DNA of 64,000 bases from Macrostomum lignano (taxonomy: Eukaryota). Of this stretch, positions 1,371 through 16,567 are shown one piece after another. A program made the position numbers and the translations under genes. The stretch is taken from contig NIVC01000222.1 of assembly GCA_002269645.1 (NCBI GenBank), positions 310,001 through 374,000 on the forward strand, written 5' to 3'. Under the pieces are notes generated by a model. It saw only the letters and a list, made by a program, of their open reading frames with translations, had not been told where the DNA came from and ran no database searches. Position 1 is the stretch's first letter; every line of letters starts with the position of its first letter.

Positions 1371-1549
1371 CCAATATACTAAAAATGAGTTGTCTGTATG
1401 TATGTATGTGTGAGATAGATTTCAGAAAAAACGGCTTAATCAATTTTCTTTAAACTTGCACCATTTGATCAGAAATTTTTCTGGGACGGTACATGCATCT
1501 TGGCTAAGAAATTGCTCAATTTTAAGAAGCGTAATATCAAACATAGAAG

Positions 1550-3105
1550 AGCCACCATGTCAAACATTAAAGAGCCACCATATCAAATATAAAAGAGTTA
1601 CCATGTCAAACATAAAAAAGCCACCATGCCAAACATAAAAGAAGCACCATGTCAAACATATACGTGACTCCATGTCAAACATTTAAGAGCCACCATGTCG
1701 AACATTTAAGAGCCACCATGTCAAACATTTAAGAGCCACCATGTCAAACCTAAATGAGCCACCACGTCTAACATTTAAGAGCCACTATGTCAAACATTTA
1801 AGAGCCATCATGTCAAACATTTAAGAGCCACCATGTCAAACATATATGTGACTTTATGTAAAACATTAAAGAGCCACCATTGTGAACATTAAAGAGCCAC
1901 CATGTCGAACATTAAAGAGCCACCATGTCAAACATAAAAAGGTATACCATGAAGAACATTGAAGAGCCACCATGTCAAACTTTAAAGAGTCACCATTTCG
2001 AACATTAAAGAGCCACCATGTCGAACATTAAAGAGCCACCATGTCGAACATTAAAAAGCCACCATGTCAAACATTGAAGAGCCACCATGTCAAACATTAA
2101 AGAGCTGCCATGTCAAACATAGAAGAGCCACCATGTCAAACATAGAAGAGCCACCATGTCAAACATTAAACAGCTACTTTGTAGAACATTAAAGAGCCGC
2201 CGTGTCAAACATAAAAGAGCCACCAGGTTAAACATTAAAGAGCCACCATGTCAAACATAGAAGAGCCACCATGTCAAACATAGAAGAGCCACCATGTAAA
2301 ACATAGAAGAGCCACCATGTCAAAACATAAAAGTGCCATCATTTCAAACATAGAAGAGCCACCATGTCAAACATAGAAGAGCCACCATGTCAAAGATTTA
2401 AGAGCCACAATGTCAAACATATATGTGACTTTATGTCAAACATTAAAGAGCCACCATCTCAAACATTAAAGAGCCACATTTTTAATTTCAAACATTAAAA
2501 AGCCACCATTTCGAACATTAAAGAGCCACCATGTCAAACATTAAATAGCCACCATGTCAAACATAAAAGAGCCACCATGTCAGACATTAAAAAGCCACCG
2601 TATCAAACATAAAAGAGTTACCATGTAGAACAAAAAACAGCCACCATGTCGAACATAAAAGAGCCACCATGAAGAACATAAAAGAGCCACCATGAAGAAC
2701 ATTAAACAGCCACCATGTCAAAGATTTAAGAGCCACCATGTCAAACTTATGTGACTTTATGTCAACATTAAAGAGCCACCATTTCGAACATTAAAGAGCC
2801 ACCATGTCAAACATTAAATAGCCACCAGGTCAAACATAAAAGAGCTATACCATGAAGAGCATTAAAGAGCCACTTTGTCGAACATTAAAGAGCCACCATG
2901 TCAAACCTAAAAGAGCCAACCATGTCTAACATAAAAGAGCCACCATGTTAAACATTAAAGAGCCACCATGTCAAACATAGAATAGCCACCATGTCAGACA
3001 TTGAAAAGCCACCATATCAAACATAAAAGAGTTACCATGTAGAACATGAAAGAGCCACCATGTCAAACATTAAAGAGCCACCATATCAAACATAAAAGAT
3101 ACACA
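1550..3105 (+). repeat. 23-bp minisatellite (GAGCCACCATGTCAAACATTAAA)n, ~65 copies
   Basis: Period of 23 measured directly (e.g. GAGCC at 1687 and 1710); point-variant units. Confidence 0.95.
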
Positions 3106-3179
3106 ATTTCAAACGTAAAAGTAAGCGAATTTTAAAGGAGCCACTATAATGCTAAGGAAATTGTCGCACTAGCTACTTA

Positions 3180-3420
3180 TTGTCTGGTGGATGCTTGCTA
3201 TTTGGGGATGCTATCTATCTGGGGGATGCTTGCTATCTGGGGGATGCTTGCTATCTGGGGATGCTTGCTATCTGGGGGGTGCTTGCTATCTGGGGGATGC
3301 TTGTTATCTGGGGGATGCTTGCTATTTGGGGATGCTATATATCTGGGGGATGCTTGCTATCTGGGGGATGCTTGCTATCTGGGGCATGCTTGCTATCCGG
3401 GGGATGCTTGCTGTCTTGGG
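3180..3420 (+). repeat. 17-18-bp minisatellite (GGGGGATGCTTGCTATCT)n
   Basis: Visible tandem units; the three overlapping + ORFs at 3180-3579 are repeat read-throughs. Confidence 0.9.
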
Positions 3421-3439
3421 ATGATTTCTTTTTGCATTG

Positions 3440-3615
3440 CACTTCATTTGAATATTTTGTCTTCTACTTTTTATTCTAAGAATCTCTTCTACTTTCTATT
3501 CGAAGAATGTCTTCTACTTTGCATTCTAAAAATGTCTTCTACTTTGTATTCTAAGAATGTCTTCTACTTTCTATTCTAAGAATCTCTTCTACTTTGTATT
3601 CTAAGAATGTCTTAC
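3440..3615 (+). repeat. AT-rich ~25-bp degenerate tandem repeat (TTCTAAGAATGTCTTCTACTTTGTA-like)
   Basis: Recurring ttctaagaat(g/c)tcttctacttt units. Confidence 0.75.
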
Positions 3616-3660
3616 TTTTTATTAGCTTTTATTAAAAAACTAATTAAAAAGACCTGAATT

Positions 3661-4612
3661 ATGGCGCTAGATAAACCAAGGATTACTGCACTTGATAAAC
3701 CAAAAATTATTGCACTTGATAAACCAAGAATTACTGCGCTTAATAAACCAAGGATTATTGCACTTGATAAACCAAGGACTACTGCACTTGATAAACCAAT
3801 GATTACTGCGCTTGATAAACCAAATAATATTGCACTTGATAAACCAAGGATTACTGCACTTGATAAACCAAGGATTACTGCGCTTGATAAACCAAGGATT
3901 ACTATGCTTTACAAACTAAGGATTATTGCACTTGATAAACCAAGGATCACTTCGCTTGATAAATCAAGGAATATTGCACTTGATAAACCAAGGATTATTG
4001 CACTTGATAAACGAAAGATTACTGCACTTGATAAACCAAGGATTATTGCACTTGATAAACCAAGGAATTTTGCACTTGATAAACCAAATATTACTGCACT
4101 TGATAAACCAAGGATTACTGTGCTTGATAAACTAAGGATTATTGCACTTGATAAAGCAAGGATTACTGCGCTTGATAAACCAAGGATTACTGCGCTTGAT
4201 AAACCAAGGATTATTGCACTTGATAAGCCAATGATTATTGCACTTGATAAGCCAAGGATTATTGCACTTGATAAACCAAGGACTACTGTAAGGATTTTTG
4301 CACTTGATAAACCAAGGATTATTGCACTTGATAAGCCAAAGATTACTGCGCTTGATAAACCAATGATTATTGCACTTGATAAGCCAAAGATTACTGCGCT
4401 TGATAAACCAAAGATTATTGCACTTGATATGCCAAAGATTACTGCGCTTGATAAACCAAGGATTATTGCACTTGATAAGCCAATGATTATTGCACTTGAT
4501 AAGCCAAAGATTATTGCATTTGATACACCAAGGATTATTGCACTTAATAAGCCAAAGATTACTGCGCTTGATAAACCAAGGATTATTGCACTTGATAAGC
4601 CAATGATTATTG
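3661..4612 (+). repeat. 24-bp satellite (GCACTTGATAAACCAAGGATTATT)n, left arm
   Basis: About 40 units; translates as ALDKPRII octapeptide repeats (read-through ORF 3661..4662, not a gene). Confidence 0.95.
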
Positions 4613-4729
4613 TTCCCTTTTGTCTATGGTTTCCGGCATTCATACTTGCGGTAACAATTTAATTGTTTGTCGGCTTTTTTCGATTGTTGCCGGATTTCAG
4701 ACGAATGTATTTGGCTATCAAAACAAGGA

Positions 4730-4905
4730 CACAGTGTATTTCTTTGGTAAGATTTTTTGAAAAAAATGGCCACTCAAGATTTTTACTATCATTAATAGAT
4801 CACATTTTTCTAGAGAGGAAGCCACAATATTAAAAAAATCTGTCGAGCGGTTGCTGAGTAACTACTGTTTTTCTGTTTTTCATGCTGTTTCATGCTGTTT
4901 TCATT
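4730..4905 (+). repeat. Left terminal inverted repeat of the transposon
   Basis: cacagtgtatttctttggtaagattttttgaaaaaaatggccactcaagatttttactatcattaatagatca...aactactgtttttctgttttt matches the reverse complement of 7590-7767. Confidence 0.9.
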
Positions 4906-5119
4906 TTTTTGCTTTGATACAGGTTATAATAGGCAAATTGGTATCAAAAACGTTATTCAATGTTTTTCTTTCAACATTAATAAATTATATTATTAGTATA
5001 AATTTAAAGAATGCTTGTACAATATAAAAACTTTCAGCTTGAAACGTAGTTGTACAATGTCAATATAAATTACACATTAGGAGTGAAAACAATGTCAAAG
5101 TCCACACTGACTACATGTC

Positions 5120-7159
5120 CTACACATGTCGGCTATTATAATGACGCACAGCCTGAAGCAAACGACTTCCAAAGCTGGGATTTTCTACATCCTTGACCTT
5201 GAAGTTCGCCCATAGCTGCTGAAAGTCGTGGTGCACTGCTTCAGATGCCTGTTCACTCCAGGGACCAAGTCCTCGCTGTTGCATCAAACAGAACTGTGGC
5301 ACATGATGCAGCACTGTGTGAACTTTCGGTGTCACTGAGATCCCGAGGTCCATGAACGTCACTTGAAAATCAGCGATCGTCTGCTGGAAATTGGAGGCCA
5401 GTTCATTGCCAAAGCAGCTGGACACAACAAGCCTGAAGCAGCGCAGTGCAGCAACGTACGGCAAGCACTGTAGCGGGCACATCGATGCCAGAGCATCAAC
5501 ATTCTGCAGGAGCACTTTGCAGCTGTTGCCGGTAAAACTGCCTCCGTGAATTGCCTCCCTGGCGACGTGGCAGTGATGCAGCCATCTGTCACACTCTGGC
5601 CACACTGACTGCATACTACAGTAAATGGTATTTACTACTCCAGTTAGCAGGTGCAGTTCGGGCGGTGGTACAATTTCTAGGACCATTGTTGAGGCTGGGA
5701 AATTTTCTAGAAGACAGGGACGTACCACATTTCCAAAATTCTTGGCAGCTGCAAGCTTGGAGCCAGAAGCCTGGAAGTTTGCATGGCTGTCTTCGAGAAG
5801 CTTCAGTGTGCGATCTGTGCCCTTCTGCAATAGCTTATTCTTGTGGGCATCGCACCAGCAGCAGGGATGAGCAGCACTGTGAGCCATAAGCCCAAGCAGC
5901 ATGTTGCACAGCTTTAAGTCGCTAGCGATGGTAAATTTGCCTTGAAGACTGCTCAGTCCAGCTGCCCTCCACAGCAACTCCAGGTTCTGGTAATTTTCTT
6001 GAATGGCTGGTGCGATGGCTACAATAAGAATTCGTTTAACACCGGAGTGCTTTAGCCGACTGCTGCGAGAGTTGCTGCTACAGGCTGCCTGTGAAGGCTC
6101 AGTGGAGTCAACACACCAACTGGAATCAAACACAGACAGGCAGATCTTGAAGAACCCACCACCTCCATCAATGCCAACCTTAATCATACAGGTCGATGGG
6201 TTCAGTTGTCTTTCTTGAATAATTCGCTTGAGAAGCTGCTGAATGCGCACACAAATAACAGCTGGACGTGATGTTACTTCTGTCACAACTCCTCGCTCCA
6301 TGTTGACGAAGTCCAACTGTTGTAGTTCAAAAAAGCTGTCGAGCTGGTGGTGAATGTCAGACAGCTTTTGTTGGAGGTACGACTCTACAGCTGTTTTTGA
6401 ACCCGACGCTGCTCTAATATGGTGAGCCAGCTTCAGCATAGAGCGCGTGCTGAGGCCCATATCCTGCTGAATGCTCACCATGCTGCTGACGCTCAGCTGC
6501 TGTGGTTGCTTCGGCGTACTCTGAGATGGTGGCTCCACTTCCATGTAAAAGCCTTCTGCATTATGTGCCCTTGTAGCAGGAGTACAGACATGTGACTTGC
6601 CTCGATTTAGCTGCGAGAGGCACTTCACACAGAGCTTCATGCTGACTGGGCGTCGAGTTTTTGACACAGTGCTGGCAGTGGGCTCGCAAACAATCCTACT
6701 TTGACTGTCAGCGCTTGGCCTTCCTCGTGGTCGCCGATTAACTGCTGCTGGATGTCCAAAGTTTGCGGAGCTTTCTCTGGCAGCCTGACACACAATACAG
6801 TTGCATCGAGTAGCTGCTCGGCTTCGTGTTCGAGGAGGCTGGGCTCCAATCTTAGAGTGGTCGAAGTCGGGCAGCGAGGACGAAAAGTTTCCTTTCTCGT
6901 ACTCTAGCAGCGTTATCCTGCATTTTGTGCACAGAGCACTTGGTAGCCGATTGTCCTGCGTATCGTAGCCATGCATCTTGAACTCTGAGATGAGTGACTG
7001 CATGTGCTCATTTATCCGGCGCATTTCCTTGCCCTTATGCATGCAGATGAGGCAGACGATGAGACGAGCATCTTCGTGCGTTCTGGCACTGCTGCTTTTA
7101 CTCATAATGCCTAACACTGAGCGTGCTTGGTGTCGATTAAGAAAGGTGCTACACAACAA
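5120..7159 (-). CDS. Chapaev-type DDE transposase, 679 aa, with a RAG1/Transib-like catalytic core
   Basis: N-terminal H-x7-CxxC-x33-P-x3-CxxC (Chapa-type zinc motif), extra Cys clusters CNCIVC and CVKC...HVC, AT-hook-like RRPRGRP. Core motifs in RAG1/Transib order: VGIDGGGG (D), IASDLK (D), HPCCWC, PELHLLTG, FTGN, TPKVHTVLHHV, GLGPWSEQASEAVH (E). No stops or introns. Confidence 0.9.
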   Translation of the reverse strand: MLCSTFLNRHQARSVLGIMSKSSSARTHEDARLIVCLICMHKGKEMRRINEHMQSLISEFKMHGYDTQDNRLPSALCTKCRITLLEYEKGNFSSSLPDFDHSKIGAQPPRTRSRAATRCNCIVCQAARESSANFGHPAAVNRRPRGRPSADSQSRIVCEPTASTVSKTRRPVSMKLCVKCLSQLNRGKSHVCTPATRAHNAEGFYMEVEPPSQSTPKQPQQLSVSSMVSIQQDMGLSTRSMLKLAHHIRAASGSKTAVESYLQQKLSDIHHQLDSFFELQQLDFVNMERGVVTEVTSRPAVICVRIQQLLKRIIQERQLNPSTCMIKVGIDGGGGFFKICLSVFDSSWCVDSTEPSQAACSSNSRSSRLKHSGVKRILIVAIAPAIQENYQNLELLWRAAGLSSLQGKFTIASDLKLCNMLLGLMAHSAAHPCCWCDAHKNKLLQKGTDRTLKLLEDSHANFQASGSKLAAAKNFGNVVRPCLLENFPASTMVLEIVPPPELHLLTGVVNTIYCSMQSVWPECDRWLHHCHVAREAIHGGSFTGNSCKVLLQNVDALASMCPLQCLPYVAALRCFRLVVSSCFGNELASNFQQTIADFQVTFMDLGISVTPKVHTVLHHVPQFCLMQQRGLGPWSEQASEAVHHDFQQLWANFKVKDVENPSFGSRLLQAVRHYNSRHV

Positions 7160-7589
7160 ATCTGATATGTAATGAGACGCAGAGATTGTGCAATGAATAT
7201 AAAAACTTCTCTAGTTAGATTAAAGTGAAATCAATCGATAAGAGCGACTTATATATATTCATTGATTGCTGAGCAGACAAGTTTTTAGCTCAGCAAACTT
7301 GTGTGCATTGCGCAATGTATAGCACACTATTTGATTGAGTAATAGATGAGTGACTGCGTTCTTCAACTCCAAATCATGCACACACAGTCTCCCCTCAATA
7401 GAGAAGTAGTACAGTTAGTACAAAACCTATTTGTTACATTCAATCACACAATTGTACCCTGTATTTTTGGAACATTCATTTTGATTAGCATATGAAATGT
7501 GTGTAAAAAACAGCCTATTTGTTGGCTAAACAAATGGACCTTAAGCTTATAAGTGATTTTCTGTTTGAACTAGAAAAACAAAAACAAAT

Positions 7590-7767
7590 AGCACGAAACA
7601 GCATAAAACAGCATTAAAAACAGAAAAACAGTAGTTTCTTAGCAACTGCTTGATGGATTTTTTAAAGTCTTGTAGCATTCTCTCTGGACATACATGATCT
7701 ATTGATGATAGTAAAAATCTGGGGTGGCCATTTTTTTCAAAAAATGTCACCATAGAAATACACTGTG
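7590..7767 (-). repeat. Right terminal inverted repeat of the transposon
   Basis: Reverse complement reads cacagtgtatttctatggtgacattttttgaaaaaaatggccaccccagatttttactatcatcaatagatca... Confidence 0.9.
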
Positions 7768-7963
7768 AGGAACAACAATAGCAACACGGCGAAAGTGTTT
7801 CATAGTCACAAAAAGTTCTTAAGAACAAACCGATCGAATCAATTGTTTTACTTTCCGTAAAAGTTGAATGTGCAGTTGTGGAACTGACCACCACAGAGGC
7901 TTTTCGGCAGGTCTTGGCCGCCCTCGGGTGCTTTCATCAGCTCGCCTCTATCAGACCCAGTTG

Positions 7964-8623
7964 TCACACTTCCGATGGTGGATTCCGCATCGTCGTCAAT
8001 CTACGAAGGGACGTTCGATCAAAGTATGCGCGAATTGTTTGCATGTCGTCCTCGGAAATAGCTTCGTATTTGTCTACCTTCTCTACGTGTCCTTCCATGT
8101 ACATTTTCACCATGGCGACAAGAACGCCATTGCAACGCTTGAAGGCTTCTCCGGTAATGATGTTCACCTGGCGATTAACGGACGGGGATTGCAGGTGGCG
8201 TTGAATAGCCGCACGAAAACAGATGAGAGACTTTGGCGCATAGTAAGTTCCATCCTGCTTTCGAAGGGATGAATAGAAAAGCCTCAGATAATCGTTCAAA
8301 AATCGATCCGGAACACGCTCAAACTCCTGGCAGAGCCCCTTCTCGTTGAGGAACTGTCGGAACCTTGCCACGTGAAGCTTCCGTTGCGTCTCGGTCGATT
8401 TCGGCACTGAGTCACTCTCAAGTCGGTTCAACATTTCCAGATCTTCGCTACCTAGCTCAGGCAGCCCGTTGGAACTGGACGACGCATCCAGGTTGTCCAT
8501 CTCCAGAACGTAGCGCGTGCTCGACTCTCGGGTGACAAAAGCCAACTCGTCCGTGGAGAGTCCACATATTTCTCCGCCAGGAATGTTTGCGTAGCGAATC
8601 ATAGCTACTTTTCCTATTTGCAC
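7964..8623 (-). pseudogene. Truncated Crypton-type tyrosine recombinase (N-terminal part of the DUF3504/ZMYM/KCTD1/QRICH1-type domain), 219 aa
   Basis: STETQRKLHVARFRQFL...LNDYLRLFYSSLRKQDGTYYAPKSLICFRAAIQRHL...FKRCNGVL...AISEDDM follows the Crypton pattern; ORF stops before any catalytic R...HxxR...H...Y region. Confidence 0.75.
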
Positions 8624-8998: not shown

Positions 8999-9290
8999 AT
9001 TGCACTTGATAAGCCAAAGATTATTGCATTTGATACACCAAGGATTATTGCACTTGATAAGCCAAAGATTACTGCGCTTGATAAACCAAAAATTATTGCA
9101 TTTGATAAGCCAAAGAATACTGCGCTTGATAAACCAAGGAATATTGCACTTGATAAGCCATCGATTATTGCACTGGATAATAAAGAATATTGCACTTGAT
9201 AAGCCAAGGATTATCGCACTTTGATAACAAGGAATATTGCACTTGATAAACCACGGATTATTGCACTCGATAAGCCAAGGTTTATTGCAC
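8999..9290 (+). repeat. 24-bp satellite (GCACTTGATAAACCAAGGATTATT)n, right arm
   Basis: Same unit and orientation as 3661-4612; decays into ttattgcactagctgaga-like units up to ~9470. Confidence 0.92.
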
Positions 9291-9473
9291 TAGATTAGAA
9301 AGGGCTATTGCACTAGCTGAGACATAGATTTTTGTACTTGATGAGTAAAGGATTATTGCACTAGCTGAGAAGCTGATTATTGCGCTGTCTAAAAAAAGAT
9401 TATTGCGCTCACTGAGACGTGGACTGTTGCACAACCTGAGAAAGCGATTATTGCATTAGCGGAGGTAACATTT

Positions 9474-9760
9474 GCACTAGCTACTTGCTGTCTCGCGGAT
9501 GCTTGCTATCTGGAGGATGCTTGCTCTCGAGGGGGGATACTTGCTATTTGGGAGGGGGGTACTGGCTACATGTATGGGATTCTTTCTATCCAGGGATGCT
9601 TGCTATTTAGGGATTCTTGCTATCTGCAGGATGCTTGCTATCTGGGTAGATGCTTCTATCTGGGGGATGCTTGCTATGAGCATTAGAGGATGCTTGCTAT
9701 CTGCGGTTGTTTACTTTTGGAGGGGGTGCTTGCTGTCTTGGGAATATTTTCTATTTAGGG
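9474..9760 (+). repeat. Degenerate second copy of the GGATGCTTGCTATCT minisatellite module
   Basis: Begins with GCACTAGCTACTT (9474-9486), identical to 3166-3178, then the same 17-18-bp units. Confidence 0.75.
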
Positions 9761-10456: not shown

Positions 10457-13400
10457 ATGAGCAGTCAGCAACAGAGAGCGCCAAGATCTGGCAATAAACG
10501 GTTTTTAGCCGACTTGTCTGATGTAGCAGCCGCCCTGCCCAGCACTGCCGACGCCCGGCCCATACTTGGCAGCGGCGACAAAACCGACCTGCCTAACACT
10601 GCCGCCCATTCCTGGAATGTCGACGTGCCTGATTTTGTGCCGCTGCGACCCACGGCGGGGGCGGCGGCGGTGACCTCGTCTAGACAGCAGCAGCCTGCCG
10701 CTTCATCATCGTCTATGACTCACCAGCCGCCACCATGGCAACAGCATGGCAACAACGATCCTATTAATCAATTAATTAGCGAGTCTCTGACAATCTTGTC
10801 AGCTGCCAGCGTCGGCGCCAGCAGTCTCAGTGGCGGAGACGATGTTGAATTGAATGCCTGTCTGATGCGACTGTATCAGACCACTCTGACCCGAGATGAC
10901 CCCGCCAAAGTTGTGTCCGCCGCCTTAGATTGCGTTAAACGGGACGGAGCTCTGTGCGATGCGGCAGCCAATTTGCTGACATTCTTGGCTGTGAATTTTG
11001 TTGTGTCGCCTCAGGTGAGGGAAGCTCTGGGGGTAGCGCAGCACCCACTGAAGCAGCTGAGAGGGTAGCGGCACCCACTGAAGCAGCTGAGAGGGAGGGT
11101 TGCGGCACCCACTGAAGCATCTGAGGGGGTAGCGGCACCCACTGAAGCATCTGAGGTTGGGGGTTGCGGCACCCACTGAAGCATCTGAGGGGGTAGCGGC
11201 ACCCACTGAAGCATCTGAGGGGGTAGCGGCACCCACTGAAGCATCTGAGGGGGTAGCGGCACCCACTGAAGCATCTGAGAGGGTTGCGGCACCCACTGAA
11301 GCATCTGAGAGGGTTGCGGCACCCACTGAAGCAGCTGAGGAGGGGTTTGCAGCACCCACTGAAGCATCTGAGGGGGTAGCGGCACCCACTGAAGCATCTG
11401 AGGGGGTAGCGGCACCCACTGAAGCATCTGAGGGGGTTGCGGCACCCACTGAAGCATCTGAGAGGGTTGCGGCACCCACTGAAGCATCTGAGGGGGTTGC
11501 GGCACCCACTGAAGCATCTGAGAGGGTTGCGGCACCCACTGAAGCAGCTGAGGAGGGGTTTGCAGCACCCACTGAAGCATCTGAAATAGGGGGTAGCGGC
11601 ACCCACTGAAGCATCTAAGGGTGTATCTGAATAATTTAGGGAGGGTATACTTGAAGCATTTGGGGAGGGTGTACCTAAAGCATTTGGGGAGGGTGTACCT
11701 GAAGCATCTGAGGGTGTACCTGAAGCATCTGAGGGTGTACCTGAAGCAGATCTGAGGGTGGGTGTACCTGAAGCAGATCTGAGGGTGGGTGTACCTGAAG
11801 CAGATCTGAGGGTGGGTGTACCTGAAGCAGATCTGAGGGTGAGTGTACCTGAAGCAGATCTGAGGGTGGGTGTACCTGAAGCAGATCTGAGGGTGGGTGT
11901 ACCTGAAGCAGATCTGAGGGTGGGTGTACCTGAAGCAGATCTGAGGGTGGGTGTACCTGAAGCAGATCTGAGGGTGGGTGTACCTGAAGCAGATCTGAGG
12001 GTGGGTGTACCTGAAGCAGATCTGAGGGTGGGTGTACCTGAAGCAGATCTGAGGGTGGGTGTACCTGGAGCATCTAAGGGTGAACCTGGGGCATCTAAGG
12101 GTGTACCTGAAGCATCTAAGGGTGTACCTGAAGCATCTGAGGAAGTATCGCTAGCTGAACAAGTTCACCTTCTCATTTGTTTCGCACCCCGCCTCAGGTG
12201 TGCCCGCACCTCATCAGCCCTCGAACCAAGAGTCCATTGGCCTGCAATCCAATCTACGAAGCACTATTAACAGTTTGCTCAACTGAGAACGATAGAATCC
12301 GACGAGAGATTGCTAATCTTCGAGCTGTCAGCTCGGAGCAGGCCAACTACATTAAGCTGTTCTCTTGGCTCTACCTTAATCTGCCTAGCTTGAGCTCGCC
12401 AACCCAGCGTCAGGGTCCTCTAATGCGTAATACTCTGCTGTTTCTTACACAGCTGGTCAATCTTAGCGGCTGTCCGTTGGCTTTTAAAACTGTTCACAGC
12501 ATACTGTCAGCGATTGGTGCGCCTCTGGATTTTGACTGTTGCGATCCGGACTTTGATGGCGGCAGCGATGTTATTCAACTGCTTGGCGACATCTATGATC
12601 AGCTTAGGAATGCCGCCGCCTCTGGCCGTGTGGGAAATCCTCAGGTTGGGATATTACATGATTGGCTGGCTTAGCACCTTTTGTCACCTTTTACCTGTCT
12701 ATCTACTCCTTTTACCTGTCTATCTACTCCTGTTACCTGTCTATCTACTCCTGTTACCTGTCTATCTACTGTTACCTGTCTATCTACTCCTGTTACCTGT
12801 CTATCTACTGTTACCTGTCTATCTACTGTTACCTGTCTATCTACTCCTGTTACCTGTCTATCTACCCCTGTTACCTGTCTATCTAATCCTGTTACCTGTC
12901 TATCTACTCCTGTTACCTAACTATCTACTCCTGTTACCTGTCTATCTACTCCTGTTACCTGTCTATCTACTGTTACCTGTCTATCTACTCCTGTTACCTG
13001 TCTATCTACTGTTACCTGTCTATCTACTCCTGTTACCTGTCTATCTACTGTTACCTGTCTATCTACTCCTGTTACCTGTCTATCTACCCCTGTTACCTGT
13101 CTATCTAATCCTGTTACCTGTCTATCTACTCCTGTTACCTATCTATCTACTCCTGTTACCTGTCTATCTACTCCTGTTACCTGTCTATCTACTCCTGTCA
13201 CCTGTCTATCTACTCTTGTTGCCTGTCTATCTACCCCTGTTACCTATCTATCTACTCCTGTTACCTGTCCATCTACTTGTGCTACCTGTCCACTTGTACG
13301 CCTTCGTCACCGAACTCCATTTAGAATCCATCTATTCTCCGAAATAAACTAACTCTCAACCGTACTTAAAAAGCCTGGTCTCAACCCCCAATCCCCTGCA

Positions 13401-15862: not shown

Positions 15863-16567
15863 ATGACGTCAGCGTCGTCAACTTCGTCGGCGGCGGTGGC
15901 AGCGGCGCCCTCGGCTACGCTGGTTGGCGGAACCAGCAGTTCCGCGTTTGTGCCGGTGAACACCGGGGCAGCCGCTGCTGCCGCCGCCGCCGCGGCCGCC
16001 GCTGCCGCTTTCGCTGCGCAATCGACTTCGTCGATGAACCTGCCGATGCGCCGGCACCATCCTCAGCTGATGTCGGCGGCGGCGTCAGGCGACGATCTCG
16101 ACGACAGTTACGGCGACGGAGGACAAGGCGAAGAGCTCGGCGACAATCTGGAAGGTCCCGAGGAGTCGCAGCCGATGAACGGGGACGGCATGGACGAAGA
16201 CGAATCCAGCTGCGAGTCCTCGGCCGTGTCGCTTCAGCGGCGTCAGCAGCAGCTGCTGCTGCAACAGCACCAGTTGAAGCAGCAGCAGCAGCAGCAGTCT
16301 TCTAGCGCTTCCGGTGTCGCTGGCGCTTCCGGTTCGGGCGGAACCCGCGGCAGCGCCGATCCGGACTATCTGCACCGGAAGCGGGAGTCGCGGCTGATTA
16401 AAAATCGCGAAGCCGCTCGAGTCTGCCGGCAGAAGAAGAAGGACTACATCCGGTGCCTGGAGAACCGGGTTAGGCTGCTGACTACACAGAATCGGCAGCT
16501 GATGGAGGAGCTCGAGAAGTTCAAAGTGATTCTGCACGAGCAGGCTCTGGGTGATGGCGAGGGTTGA
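15863..16567 (+). CDS. CREB: CREB/CREM/ATF1-family bZIP transcription factor (frame open from 15554; first ATG at 15863; an upstream exon is possible)
   Basis: RKRESRLIKNREAARVCRQKKKDYIRCLENRVRLLTTQNRQLMEEL matches the CREB basic region and zipper; polyA and polyQ low-complexity N-terminus; no RRPSY kinase-inducible motif seen. Confidence 0.88.
   Translation: MTSASSTSSAAVAAAPSATLVGGTSSSAFVPVNTGAAAAAAAAAAAAAAFAAQSTSSMNLPMRRHHPQLMSAAASGDDLDDSYGDGGQGEELGDNLEGPEESQPMNGDGMDEDESSCESSAVSLQRRQQQLLLQQHQLKQQQQQQSSSASGVAGASGSGGTRGSADPDYLHRKRESRLIKNREAARVCRQKKKDYIRCLENRVRLLTTQNRQLMEELEKFKVILHEQALGDGEG
15864..15871. promoter_or_regulatory. Perfect CRE palindrome TGACGTCA overlapping the first ATG of the CREB-like ORF
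   Basis: tcATGACGTCAgcg at 15861-15874; function not shown. Confidence 0.35.

What the first reader, a model, noticed from the sequence alone, without database searches (positions are those of the whole stretch)
4730..7767. Intact, possibly active RAG1-related transposon: Chapa-type N-terminus plus full RAG1/Transib catalytic and zinc core
Seen: complete element with paired TIRs, a clean 4-bp TSD and an uninterrupted 679-aa ORF. The protein has an N-terminal H-x7-CxxC-x33-P-x3-CxxC zinc motif, two more Cys clusters and an AT-hook. Its core has D (IDGG), D (SDLK), CxxC, LH, FTGN, H-x4-H and SEQASE in RAG1 order. Known: the RAG1 core derives from Transib-type transposases (5-bp TSD); Chapaev transposases share an N-terminal zinc domain with RAG1 and make 4-bp TSDs. 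Inference: this element joins both RAG1-like modules in one compact intronless protein, with no RAG2 partner. It is a candidate live relative of the RAG lineage in a probable flatworm.
Basis: partly seen in the sequence, partly recalled or inferred. Interest (0 to 1): 0.85.

Follow-up and report, generated by a model that had tools for sequence, protein, structure and literature searches.

The report
Active Chapaev DNA transposon in flatworm
This is an intact, very recently mobile cut-and-paste transposon of the already described Chapaev group (distant relatives of the RAG1/Transib enzymes); it is an ordinary member of a very large family, but its ends are unexpectedly built like the signals that RAG1 recognises.

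Summary
Window 4730-7767 is a complete 3,038-bp element. It has ~186-bp inverted ends (CACAGTG...CACTGTG), a 4-bp AGGA duplication and one intronless transposase ORF. Every listed motif is present and conserved in 48 homologues. The predicted fold matches only RAG1, amphioxus RAG1L and HzTransib in the PDB.

The interpretation does not hold. A Chapa/NZD zinc domain joined to a Transib-like core with C(2)C, LH and H(4)H motifs, CAC...GTG ends and 3-4-bp duplications is the published description of Chapaev transposons. The N-terminus scores 41-62 bits against published Chapaev-1/2/5_HM and Chapaev-1_AA Chapa domains, versus 17-23 bits for RAG1L. An exhaustive profile search finds about 11,000 related protein clusters.

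Activity is well supported. Ten copies sit at six sites, and copies at three of those sites differ by only 1-4 nt. At least 40 paralogous empty sites carry a single AGGA.

One added finding: eight diverged subfamilies in this genome share an end layout of heptamer, 22-23-nt variable spacer and A-rich block, as in Transib ends and RSS23. The searchable literature does not report this for Chapaev.

The parts
4726..4729 (.). Left copy of the 4-bp target-site duplication (AGGA)
   Evidence: Empty paralogous sites carry a single AGGA.
4730..4915 (+). Left terminal inverted repeat (~186 bp). It lies at the 3' end relative to the transposase gene.
   Evidence: repeat pairs I1 and I2, 81-83% complementary to 7581-7767.
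4730..4736 (+). Terminal heptamer CACAGTG, identical to the consensus RSS heptamer
   Evidence: CAC is invariant in all 8 subfamilies.
4760..4768 (+). A-rich nonamer-like block AAAAAAATG, 23 nt after the heptamer
   Evidence: This is the positionally conserved block; 0 of 20,000 rotations reach the observed conservation.
5120..7105 (-). Transposase ORF: 661 aa plus stop codon, no introns
   Evidence: Homologues align end to end. AF2 model has pLDDT 87.2.
6776..7078 (-). Chapa / NZD-like double zinc finger, residues 10-110 (H10, C18, C21, C59, C62, C101, C103, C106)
   Evidence: 41-62 bits against published Chapaev Chapa domains; best structural match is the ZAD of Pita (7pok), probability 0.99, rmsd 1.7-2.0 A; weak zf-AD hits in 7 of 48 members.
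6713..6736 (-). AT-hook-like RRPRGRPS, residues 124-131 (core R127-G128-R129-P130)
   Evidence: Sequence checked. The G-R-P core is kept in the family consensus (KxKxGRP).
6584..6631 (-). CCHC zinc knuckle, residues 159-174 (C159, C162, H172, C174)
   Evidence: C159, C162 and H172 are conserved in >=90% of 48 sequences. C174 matches the family consensus.
5123..6343 (-). Catalytic core, residues 255-661: RNase H-like fold with D313, D396 and E622. It includes a ZnB-like site (C415, C418, H596, H601) and the LH motif (484-485).
   Evidence: all 39 significant Foldseek PDB hits are RAG1, BbRAGL or HzTransib (best 4.5e-12); hhalign puts the residues in register with RAG1 D708, C727/C730, H937/H942 and E962; conservation.
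7248..7257 (-). TATA-like TATATATAAG, 152 nt upstream of the ATG (candidate promoter)
   Evidence: This is a pattern match only.
7581..7767 (-). Right terminal inverted repeat. Read inwards it gives CACAGTG, 23 nt, then AAAAAAATG.
7768..7771 (.). Right copy of the target-site duplication (AGGA)

Best explanation
This is an autonomous DNA transposon of the Chapaev group. That group is filed under CMC / 'CMCT' in some schemes and as the Chapaev clade of the Transib superfamily by Kapitonov & Koonin. The host is very probably Macrostomum lignano.

The element's single intronless gene encodes a 661-aa transposase with these parts:
- a Chapa/NZD-type double zinc finger;
- an AT-hook-like GRP motif and a CCHC knuckle;
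- a RAG1/Transib-fold DDE core with D313, D396 and E622, plus a Cys2-His2 zinc site (C415, C418, H596, H601).

Shown here: the element has been inserted precisely, with 4-bp staggered target cuts, at many sites. It moved recently enough that copies at different loci are nearly identical.

Inferred, not shown: transposase subunits bind the two ends, each built as CAC-heptamer, 22-23-nt spacer and A-rich block. The A-rich block is probably read by the AT-hook or the helical region before the RNase H fold. By analogy with RAG and HzTransib, the enzyme would nick at the heptamer border, release the element through a hairpin on the flanking DNA, and integrate it without any RAG2-like partner.
For: Structure of the element:
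- TIRs, TSD and ORF are as described.
- Twenty-two of 25 independent insertions across 8 subfamilies have perfect 4-bp TSDs with no target consensus.
- Paralogous sites without the element carry a single AGGA (six inspected). The joined flanks match >=40 places.

Recent activity:
- Ten copies are >=99% identical and sit at 6 sites. Copies at 3 of those sites differ by 1-4 nt of 3,038.
- Nine of the 10 copies keep the open frame.

Family assignment:
- The N-terminal profile gives 62.1, 52.2, 40.9 and 40.6 bits against published Chapaev-2_HM, Chapaev-1_AA, Chapaev-5_HM and Chapaev-1_HM. RAG1L scores 17-23 bits and Chapaev3 at most 21 (sequences from PMC4411706 Additional file 5).
- The published Chapaev hallmarks are all present: 3-4-bp TSD, CAC...GTG termini, DDE plus C(2)C, LH and H(4)H (PMC4079192).

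Fold and catalytic residues:
- Full-length AF2 model has pLDDT 87.2. All 39 Foldseek PDB hits at E<=1e-3 are RAG1, BbRAGL or HzTransib, with TM 0.38-0.57 normalised to the target.
- hhalign against RAG1 gives E 1.1e-3 and puts the second D, the catalytic E and the zinc residues in register. The first D (D313) rests on motif similarity only.

Family size: the profile finds 10,942 representative proteins at E<=1e-3.
Against: - No Chapaev core sequences from Repbase could be obtained. Assignment to the Chapaev-1/2/5_HM and Chapaev-1_AA subgroup therefore rests on the N-terminal domain (from OCR-noisy published sequences), the TSD, the termini and the motifs. There is no core phylogeny.
- Sequence similarity of the core to RAG1 is weak. 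hhalign probability is only 20%, and the Pfam RAG1 model and PDB sequence searches find nothing.
- The mechanism (hairpin formation, binding of the A-rich block) is by analogy only.
- No poly(A) signal was found in the 204 nt after the stop codon, and expression was not examined.
- One subfamily-A copy has a 5-bp TSD, one subfamily-B copy has a 3-bp TSD and one has none.
Confidence: 0.88

Rival explanations
1. On it, the element is a previously unrecognised lineage that newly combines a Chapaev-type N-terminus with a genuine Transib/RAG1 core. It would then be closer to the RAG lineage than known Chapaevs.
For: Foldseek hits are exclusively RAG1, RAGL or Transib. The terminal heptamer is exactly CACAGTG. 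The ends have a heptamer, 23-nt spacer and A-rich block like Transib and RSS23 (PMC1131882). One copy has a 5-bp TSD.
Against: The combination is the published architecture of Chapaev (PMC4411706, bioRxiv 10.64898/2026.01.24.700457). The N-terminus matches named Chapaev families far better than RAG1L. TSDs are 4 bp in 22 of 25 insertions, not 5. The core is not detectable with the Pfam RAG1 model or by HMMER against RAG1 or HzTransib. No CMC structure appeared among the Foldseek PDB hits, so RAG1 and Transib may simply be the nearest solved relatives of any Chapaev.
Confidence: 0.07
2. A canonical Transib transposon.
For: RAG1/Transib-like fold and Transib-like end layout.
Against: Transib makes 5-bp TSDs and its transposase has no identifiable domain beyond the core (PMC1131882, PMC4411706). 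Here the TSD is 4 bp and a Chapa domain is present. There is no HMMER-level similarity to RAG1 or HzTransib.
Confidence: 0.02
3. A domesticated host gene, or an inactive relic that only looks intact.
For: One of the ten copies carries a stop codon.
Against: The element has paired TIRs and TSDs. Near-identical copies lie at different loci (1-4 differences in 3 kb). At least 40 places match the joined flanks across the insertion point. Many parallel subfamilies keep open frames.
Confidence: 0.03

Closest known systems
Chapaev transposons, RING-less subgroup represented by Chapaev-1/2/5_HM (Hydra) and Chapaev-1_AA (Aedes) (Kapitonov & Jurka 2007; Kapitonov & Koonin 2015, PMC4411706)
   Same: The Chapa domain has the same pattern: HE..R..VC.LC ... 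LP..IC..C ... TRS...C.C..C (41-62 bits). A GRP motif follows it. There is no RING finger. TSDs are 4 bp and termini are CAC...GTG. The core is DDE with C(2)C, LH and H(4)H. The element carries a single transposase gene.
   Different: The host is a flatworm, and no paper in the library links Chapaev with Macrostomum. Identity to the best database relatives is only about 30-45%. The ends carry a conserved second A-rich block at 22-23 nt. I could not find that described for Chapaev, but the original Repbase Reports were not readable here.
Chapaev3 (for example Chapaev3-1_AC, Garfield, Conan; PMC4079192, PMC3014272)
   Same: CAC termini, DDE with C(2)C/LH/H(4)H, and a Chapa-like N-terminal finger.
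   Different: Chapaev3 makes 3-bp TWA duplications between A and T, and the TIRs listed for anole Chapaev3 families are 11-19 bp. Here the TSDs are 4 bp with no consensus and the TIRs are about 130-375 bp. The N-terminal profile scores at most 21 bits against Chapaev3.
Transib / HzTransib
   Same: Same overall fold (Foldseek E 2.7e-7, TM 0.57 to 6pqx_A). Same order of D, D, CxxC, HxxxxH and E. No RAG2 partner. The ends are built as heptamer, 23-nt spacer and A-rich nonamer (Transib consensus CACAATG-N23-AAAAAAATC, PMC1131882).
   Different: Transib makes 5-bp TSDs and has no Chapa domain. Sequence similarity is below HMMER detection.
RAG1 / RAG1L (V(D)J recombinase and RAG-like transposases)
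   Same: The best structural matches are RAG1 (4wwx_E, 4.5e-12). hhalign puts the second D, the catalytic E and the ZnB residues in register. The N-terminal zinc domain is NZD/Chapa-like with a ZAD-like first finger. The terminal heptamer is identical to the RSS consensus CACAGTG.
   Different: There is no RAG2/RAG2L partner, no RING finger and no 12/23 asymmetry, since both ends have the 23-type spacing. TSDs are 4 bp, not 5. Identity in the structural alignments is about 12-14%.

Membership tests
Chapaev (CMC/CMCT; Chapaev clade of the Transib superfamily) | 3-4-bp target-site duplication | tested here: met
   Twenty-two of 25 independent insertions in 8 subfamilies have perfect 4-bp TSDs. 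Empty sites carry a single AGGA. The hallmark is taken from PMC4079192.
Chapaev (CMC/CMCT; Chapaev clade of the Transib superfamily) | TIRs with invariable 5'-CAC...GTG-3' termini | tested here: met
   The window element has CACAGTG...CACTGTG. CAC is invariant in all 8 subfamilies and in the beetle relative.
Chapaev (CMC/CMCT; Chapaev clade of the Transib superfamily) | [quoted passage not shown] | tested here: met
   D313, D396, C415-x2-C418, L484-H485, H596-x4-H601 and E622 are invariant or >=90% conserved in 48 sequences.
Chapaev (CMC/CMCT; Chapaev clade of the Transib superfamily) | N-terminal Chapa domain (complex zinc finger shared with the RAG1 N-terminus) | tested here: met
   The profile of residues 1-125 hits published Chapa domains at 41-62 bits. 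The model's first finger superposes on the ZAD of Pita (7pok). The 2026 preprint reports the same ZAD resemblance for the RAG1 NZD, and that the Chapa domain shares the NZD architecture.
Chapaev (CMC/CMCT; Chapaev clade of the Transib superfamily) | Core groups with Repbase Chapaev transposases in a phylogeny | not testable with these tools
Only N-terminal fragments could be recovered from a published supplement.
Chapaev3 | 3-bp TWA duplication, inserted between A and T | tested here: not met
   TSDs are 4 bp and diverse: AGGA, GGGT, TATG, CCAC, ACTG, CCTT and others.
Transib (canonical) | 5-bp target-site duplication | tested here: not met
   Only 1 of 25 insertions has 5 bp (L009, GGAAT).
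Transib (canonical) | Core detectably similar to the RAG1 core by sequence, with no other domains | tested here: not met
   The Pfam RAG1 model gives no hit in any of 48 members. HMMER against PDB sequences gives none. A Chapa domain is present.
Transib (canonical) | TIR made of CAC-heptamer, ~23-nt variable spacer and A-rich nonamer | tested here: met
   This shows that the element resembles Transib at its ends; it does not make it a member.
RAG-like (RAGL/ProtoRAG) transposon | Convergent RAG1L and RAG2L genes inside the element | tested here: not met
   The only ORFs of >=80 aa lying wholly within 4730-7767 are the transposase and two frames antisense to it.
RAG1/Transib structural class | RNase H fold with an inserted Cys2/His2 zinc module and a C-terminal helical domain | tested here: met
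   Foldseek aligns 520-640 columns to RAG1, RAGL or Transib chains at E down to 4.5e-12.

The most novel reading that the evidence does not exclude
The two-block end layout would be ancestral to the whole Chapaev-Transib-RAG assemblage and not a Transib/RAG speciality. The layout is a CAC-heptamer, a 22-23-nt variable spacer and an A-rich nonamer-like block. On this reading the block is read in this family by the conserved GRP AT-hook, as the GGRPR of the RAG1 nonamer-binding domain reads the RSS nonamer (the RAG1 point is from my own knowledge of the NBD-DNA structure, PDB 3GNA). Because copies are intact and nearly identical, this element would be a live, RAG2-independent, NZD-bearing relative. 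The unknown function of the RAG1 N-terminal zinc domain could be tested on it.
Probability: 0.3. Interest if true: 0.7.

Novelty: new member of a known kind. Interest (0 to 1): 0.38.

Why it matters
As a classification result it matters little. It is one more family in a superfamily with about 11,000 representative protein clusters, and the 'two RAG1 modules in one protein' idea has been in the literature since 2007-2015.

Two things give it some value:
- It is an apparently live Chapaev element: intact frame, copies differing by 1-4 nt, and clean empty sites. A 2026 preprint on the RAG1 N-terminal zinc domain states that experimental validation in Chapaev systems is lacking. A compact, intronless 3-kb element is a practical starting point for that.
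- Its ends, and those of seven diverged sister subfamilies, keep an A-rich block at a fixed 22-23-nt distance from the heptamer. That is the Transib/RSS23 layout. If homologous, it pushes the origin of the heptamer-spacer-nonamer design back before the Chapaev/Transib split.

Tried and rejected
- Pfam on the protein and on all 48 family members gave no RAG1, Transib or Transposase_21 hit. It gave only DUF1280 (9 of 48), weak zf-AD and noise.
- HMMER with the single sequence and with the profile against PDB sequences gave nothing, or tropomyosin noise.
- The Pfam RAG1 model (PF12940) searched over the whole genome returned nothing. The control genomes were also silent, so this is uninformative.
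- A RAG1-core search in the protein database returned only vertebrate RAG1. The RAG1 profile used for hhalign was therefore shallow (Neff 2.4) and the hhalign probability low.
- A second database search with the alignment added only one further protein, and no distant or newly named relatives.
- I tried to read the ends of relatives from other organisms. Most metagenome contigs were too short or showed no detectable TIRs. Only the beetle Brassicogethes aeneus gave a full element. It has CACGGTG termini but no A-rich block, so the block is not universal. One contig (L060) begins 25 nt before an A8-TTG block, but its true terminus is cut off.
- A TIR DNA search for non-autonomous derivatives found none, though such counts are lower bounds.
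- Yuan & Wessler 2011 and the Repbase Reports on Chapaev could not be read.
- Model coordinates are not exposed, so the zinc-site geometry and a residue-level superposition on RAG1 could not be checked.
Full report
**What is there**

Window 4730-7767 is a 3,038-bp element. Its ends are inverted repeats of about 186 bp: 4730-4915 against 7581-7767, 81-83% complementary. They start CACAGTG and end CACTGTG. AGGA flanks both ends, at 4726-4729 and 7768-7771.

The minus strand carries one uninterrupted frame. The stop codon is at 5120-5122. The first ATG is at 7105, which gives 661 aa, and the homologues begin there. No other frame of 80 aa or more lies wholly within the element apart from two frames antisense to the ORF. 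So there is no RAG2-like partner gene.

**The insertion is real and recent**

The genome holds ten copies that are at least 99% identical over the full 3,038 bp. The assembly is 764.4 Mb in 5,269 contigs. One of the few named protein relatives is from Macrostomum lignano.

The ten copies occupy six different sites:
- five sites have perfect 4-bp duplications (AGGA, GGGT, TATG, CCAC, ACTG);
- one site has a 5-bp duplication (GGAAT).

Copies at three different sites differ by only 1-4 nt of 3,038. The others differ by 0.7-1.3%. Nine of the ten copies keep the open frame.

Joining the two flanks of the window copy, with one AGGA, gave at least 40 places in the genome that match at 98-100% identity straight across the junction. 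The six I inspected read ...caaaacaAGGAacaacaat... with a single AGGA. The element therefore landed inside another repeat family. Those other repeat copies serve as empty sites, and they fix the boundaries and the 4-bp duplication exactly.

A search with the end sequence found only the ten copies and five old degenerate relatives. No miniature derivatives were detected.

**The protein motifs**

- H10-x7-C18xxC21-x33-P55-x3-C59xxC62;
- C101/C103/C106;
- an RGRP AT-hook core (127-130);
- a CCHC knuckle (C159, C162, H172, C174);
- in the core: D313 (IDGG), D396 (SDLK), C415xxC418, L484-H485, a G-N motif at 526-527, H596-x4-H601 and SEQASE ending in E622.

In an alignment with 47 homologues of 29-48% identity, these positions are invariant or conserved in at least 90% of sequences.

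**Fold**

An AlphaFold2 model built on that alignment is confident: mean pLDDT 87.2, pTM 0.70. Foldseek against the PDB gave 39 matches at E<=1e-3, and every one is RAG1, amphioxus RAG1L or HzTransib.
- Best hit 4wwx_E: E 4.5e-12, about 600 aligned columns.
- 6b40_A (BbRAGL): E 1.9e-7.
- 6pqx_A (HzTransib): E 2.7e-7, TM 0.57.
- The next hits are noise, at E>0.1.

A profile-profile comparison with a vertebrate RAG1 alignment is weak: E 1.1e-3, probability 20%, with a shallow RAG1 profile. It nevertheless aligns 227 columns in the expected register. In mouse RAG1 numbering (my typed core was confirmed identical to PDB RAG1 over 622 residues) the pairs are:
- SD396LK with YD708EK;
- C415/C418 with C727/C730;
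- ELH with ALH;
- GN with GN;
- H596/H601 with H937/H942;
- E622 with E962.

Plain HMMER sees nothing between this family and RAG1. That is unsurprising, because RAG1 itself hits HzTransib at only E 0.0027.

**Why it is not new**

The literature already defines Chapaev transposons by these features.
- Kapitonov & Koonin 2015 (PMC4411706) divide the Transib superfamily into Transib, TransibSU, Chapaev and Chapaev3. They describe the Chapa domain as the N-terminal part of RAG1, found in Chapaev and Chapaev3. They also note that Chapaev cores are only distantly related to other Transibs.
- PMC4079192 gives the Chapaev hallmarks as a 3-4-bp TSD, CAC...GTG termini, DDE, and the C(2)C, LH and H(4)H motifs. 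It shows that Chapaev3 makes TWA duplications.
[quoted passage not shown] It names the group CMCT.
- A 2026 preprint (10.64898/2026.01.24.700457) solved the RAG1 N-terminal zinc domain. It relates that domain to the Chapa domain and likens its first finger to the ZAD of Pita, 7POK.

To test membership I transcribed the Chapa-domain alignment from Additional file 5 of PMC4411706 (the text is OCR-noisy). I searched it with a profile of residues 1-125 of my family:

| Published sequence | Bits |
|---|---|
| Chapaev-2_HM | 62.1 |
| Chapaev-1_AA | 52.2 |
| Chapaev-5_HM | 40.9 |
| Chapaev-1_HM | 40.6 |
| RAG1L (three sequences) | 17-23 |
| Chapaev3 (best) | 21 |
| Vertebrate RAG1 | 5 or less |

An N-terminal-only model (pLDDT 75.7) has the Pita ZAD (7pok) as its best PDB match: probability 0.99, rmsd 1.7-2.0 A over 57-60 columns, though E is only about 0.1. 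That is the same resemblance reported for the RAG1 domain.

An exhaustive HMMER search of 1.84 billion representative proteins found 10,942 relatives at E<=1e-3 and 1,739 at E<=1e-30. The family is huge and widespread. The element is a RING-less Chapaev of the Chapaev-1/2/5_HM and Chapaev-1_AA type. The missing test is a core phylogeny against Repbase, which I could not run.

**What I found beyond the finding: the ends**

Both ends of the window element read CACAGTG, then 23 nt, then AAAAAAATG. Kapitonov & Jurka 2005 (PMC1131882) give the Transib end consensus as CACAATG, a variable 23-bp spacer and AAAAAAATC. They give RSS23 as CACAGTG-N22/23-ACAAAAACC.

The genome contains many other subfamilies of this transposase, 35-48% identical in protein and mostly with open frames. 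I recovered both ends for seven of them. In the table below, 'block' means what lies from nt 30-31 of the arm.

| Subfamily | Heptamer | Block at nt 30-31 |
|---|---|---|
| A (window) | CACAGTG | A6-7 run then T |
| B | CACGGTG | A6-7 run then T |
| C | CACAGGT | A6-7 run then T |
| D | CACGCCT | AAAGAAAAT |
| E | CACGGTT | A6-7 run then T |
| F | CACTCTT | ATGAAATAT |
| G | CACGCCT | ATGAAATAT |
| H | CACACTG | A6-7 run then T |

Further results on the ends:
- All eight subfamilies start with CAC.
- Mean pairwise identity is 0.35 in the spacer, 0.62 in nt 30-42 and 0.41 beyond.
- In a rotation test that keeps each arm's composition and runs, the best conserved 9-nt window starts at nt 30 with score 51 of 63. 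None of 20,000 rotations exceeded 46.
- The two ends of each element have the same spacing, so there is no 12/23 asymmetry.
- Across these subfamilies, 22 of 25 independent insertions have perfect 4-bp TSDs with no target consensus.

The only complete relative I could read from another phylum is from the beetle Brassicogethes aeneus. It has CACGGTG ends but no A-rich block, so the block is not universal in the family. No paper in the searchable library connects Chapaev with a nonamer-like element.

**How it most likely works**

Shown:
- precise insertion with 4-bp staggered target cuts;
- recent movement;
- conserved DDE and Cys2His2 residues in a RAG1/Transib fold;
- a two-block end.

Inferred:
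- The transposase binds each end through the heptamer, via the core, and through the A-rich block. The block's reader is plausibly the conserved GRP AT-hook or the helical region before the RNase H fold. From my own knowledge of the 3GNA structure, the RAG1 nonamer-binding domain begins with a GGRPR minor-groove motif.
- The enzyme nicks at the heptamer border, forms a hairpin on the flanking DNA as RAG and HzTransib do, and integrates the blunt-ended element, all without a RAG2-like partner.

None of the chemistry has been tested for any Chapaev, as far as I could find.

**Verdict**

Interest is modest and rests on two points: the apparent activity of an experimentally convenient Chapaev, and the RSS23/Transib-like end layout.

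Noticed in passing
window 1537-4612 and 8999-9706: Several tandem arrays flank the insertion: 23-bp unit x69 at 1537-3121, 18-bp unit at 3183-3423, 25-bp unit at 3458-3613 and 24-bp unit x40 at 3658-4612. The 24-bp and 18-bp arrays recur at 8999-9706. The 24-bp array creates spurious 333-aa and 244-aa ORFs (ALDKPRII repeats).
   Followed up: partly
window ~4570-4729 plus 7772-7930, i.e. the host sequence around the insertion: The DNA the element landed in is itself a repeat. At least 40 places in the genome match it at 98-100% identity. I did not identify the repeat family.
   Followed up: partly
window 7964-8602 (-): A 212-aa ORF just right of the element has a weak QRICH1-domain match (PF25561, E 7.7e-6, below the Pfam cut-off). 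From memory, QRICH1 is a Crypton-derived gene, so the host repeat may be a Crypton-like tyrosine-recombinase element.
   Followed up: no
window 15863-16567 (+): A 234-aa ORF carries a clear bZIP domain (PF00170, E 1.4e-14). It is probably a host transcription-factor exon or gene.
   Followed up: no
window 11029-12000: Further tandem arrays with 30-bp and 27-bp units, G+C-rich, overlapping ORFs on both strands.
   Followed up: no
L009 (G000:C1835, element at about 87771-90805): This copy of the same subfamily is flanked by a 5-bp duplication (GGAAT) and not 4 bp. A subfamily-B copy (L017) has only 3 bp (CCC), and L042 has no direct repeat.
   Followed up: partly
G000:C4336:39963-41261, C4776:10924-12222, C4414:10034-11332, C5110:1235-2224: These are old, degenerate relatives of the window subfamily: 65-70% aa identity, 5-17 stop codons, TIRs 75-78% identical. 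The lineage has therefore been in this genome for a long time.
   Followed up: partly
homologues P0008 (residues 209-345) and P0076 (residues 238-364): Pfam DUF1280 (PF06918) matches these homologues above its gathering cut-off (29.6 and 27.2 bits; cut-off 25). The match covers the region before and around the first catalytic Asp. From memory, DUF1280 is a family of uncharacterised Caenorhabditis proteins. It may be a fragment of a Chapaev-type transposase.
   Followed up: partly
L060 (ncbi GCA_013332655.1 JAAUYJ010162480.1), both contig ends: This is a distant relative (P0073, 29% identity). Its contig starts and ends inside the TIR, 25 nt before an AAAAAAAATTG block. That is suggestive of the same end layout, but the true terminus is missing.
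   Followed up: partly
L046 (Brassicogethes aeneus OV121132.1, 64177109-64184043): A 3.1-kb relative with 134-bp TIRs lies within the span of an annotated gelsolin/villin-type gene model, presumably in an intron.
   Followed up: no
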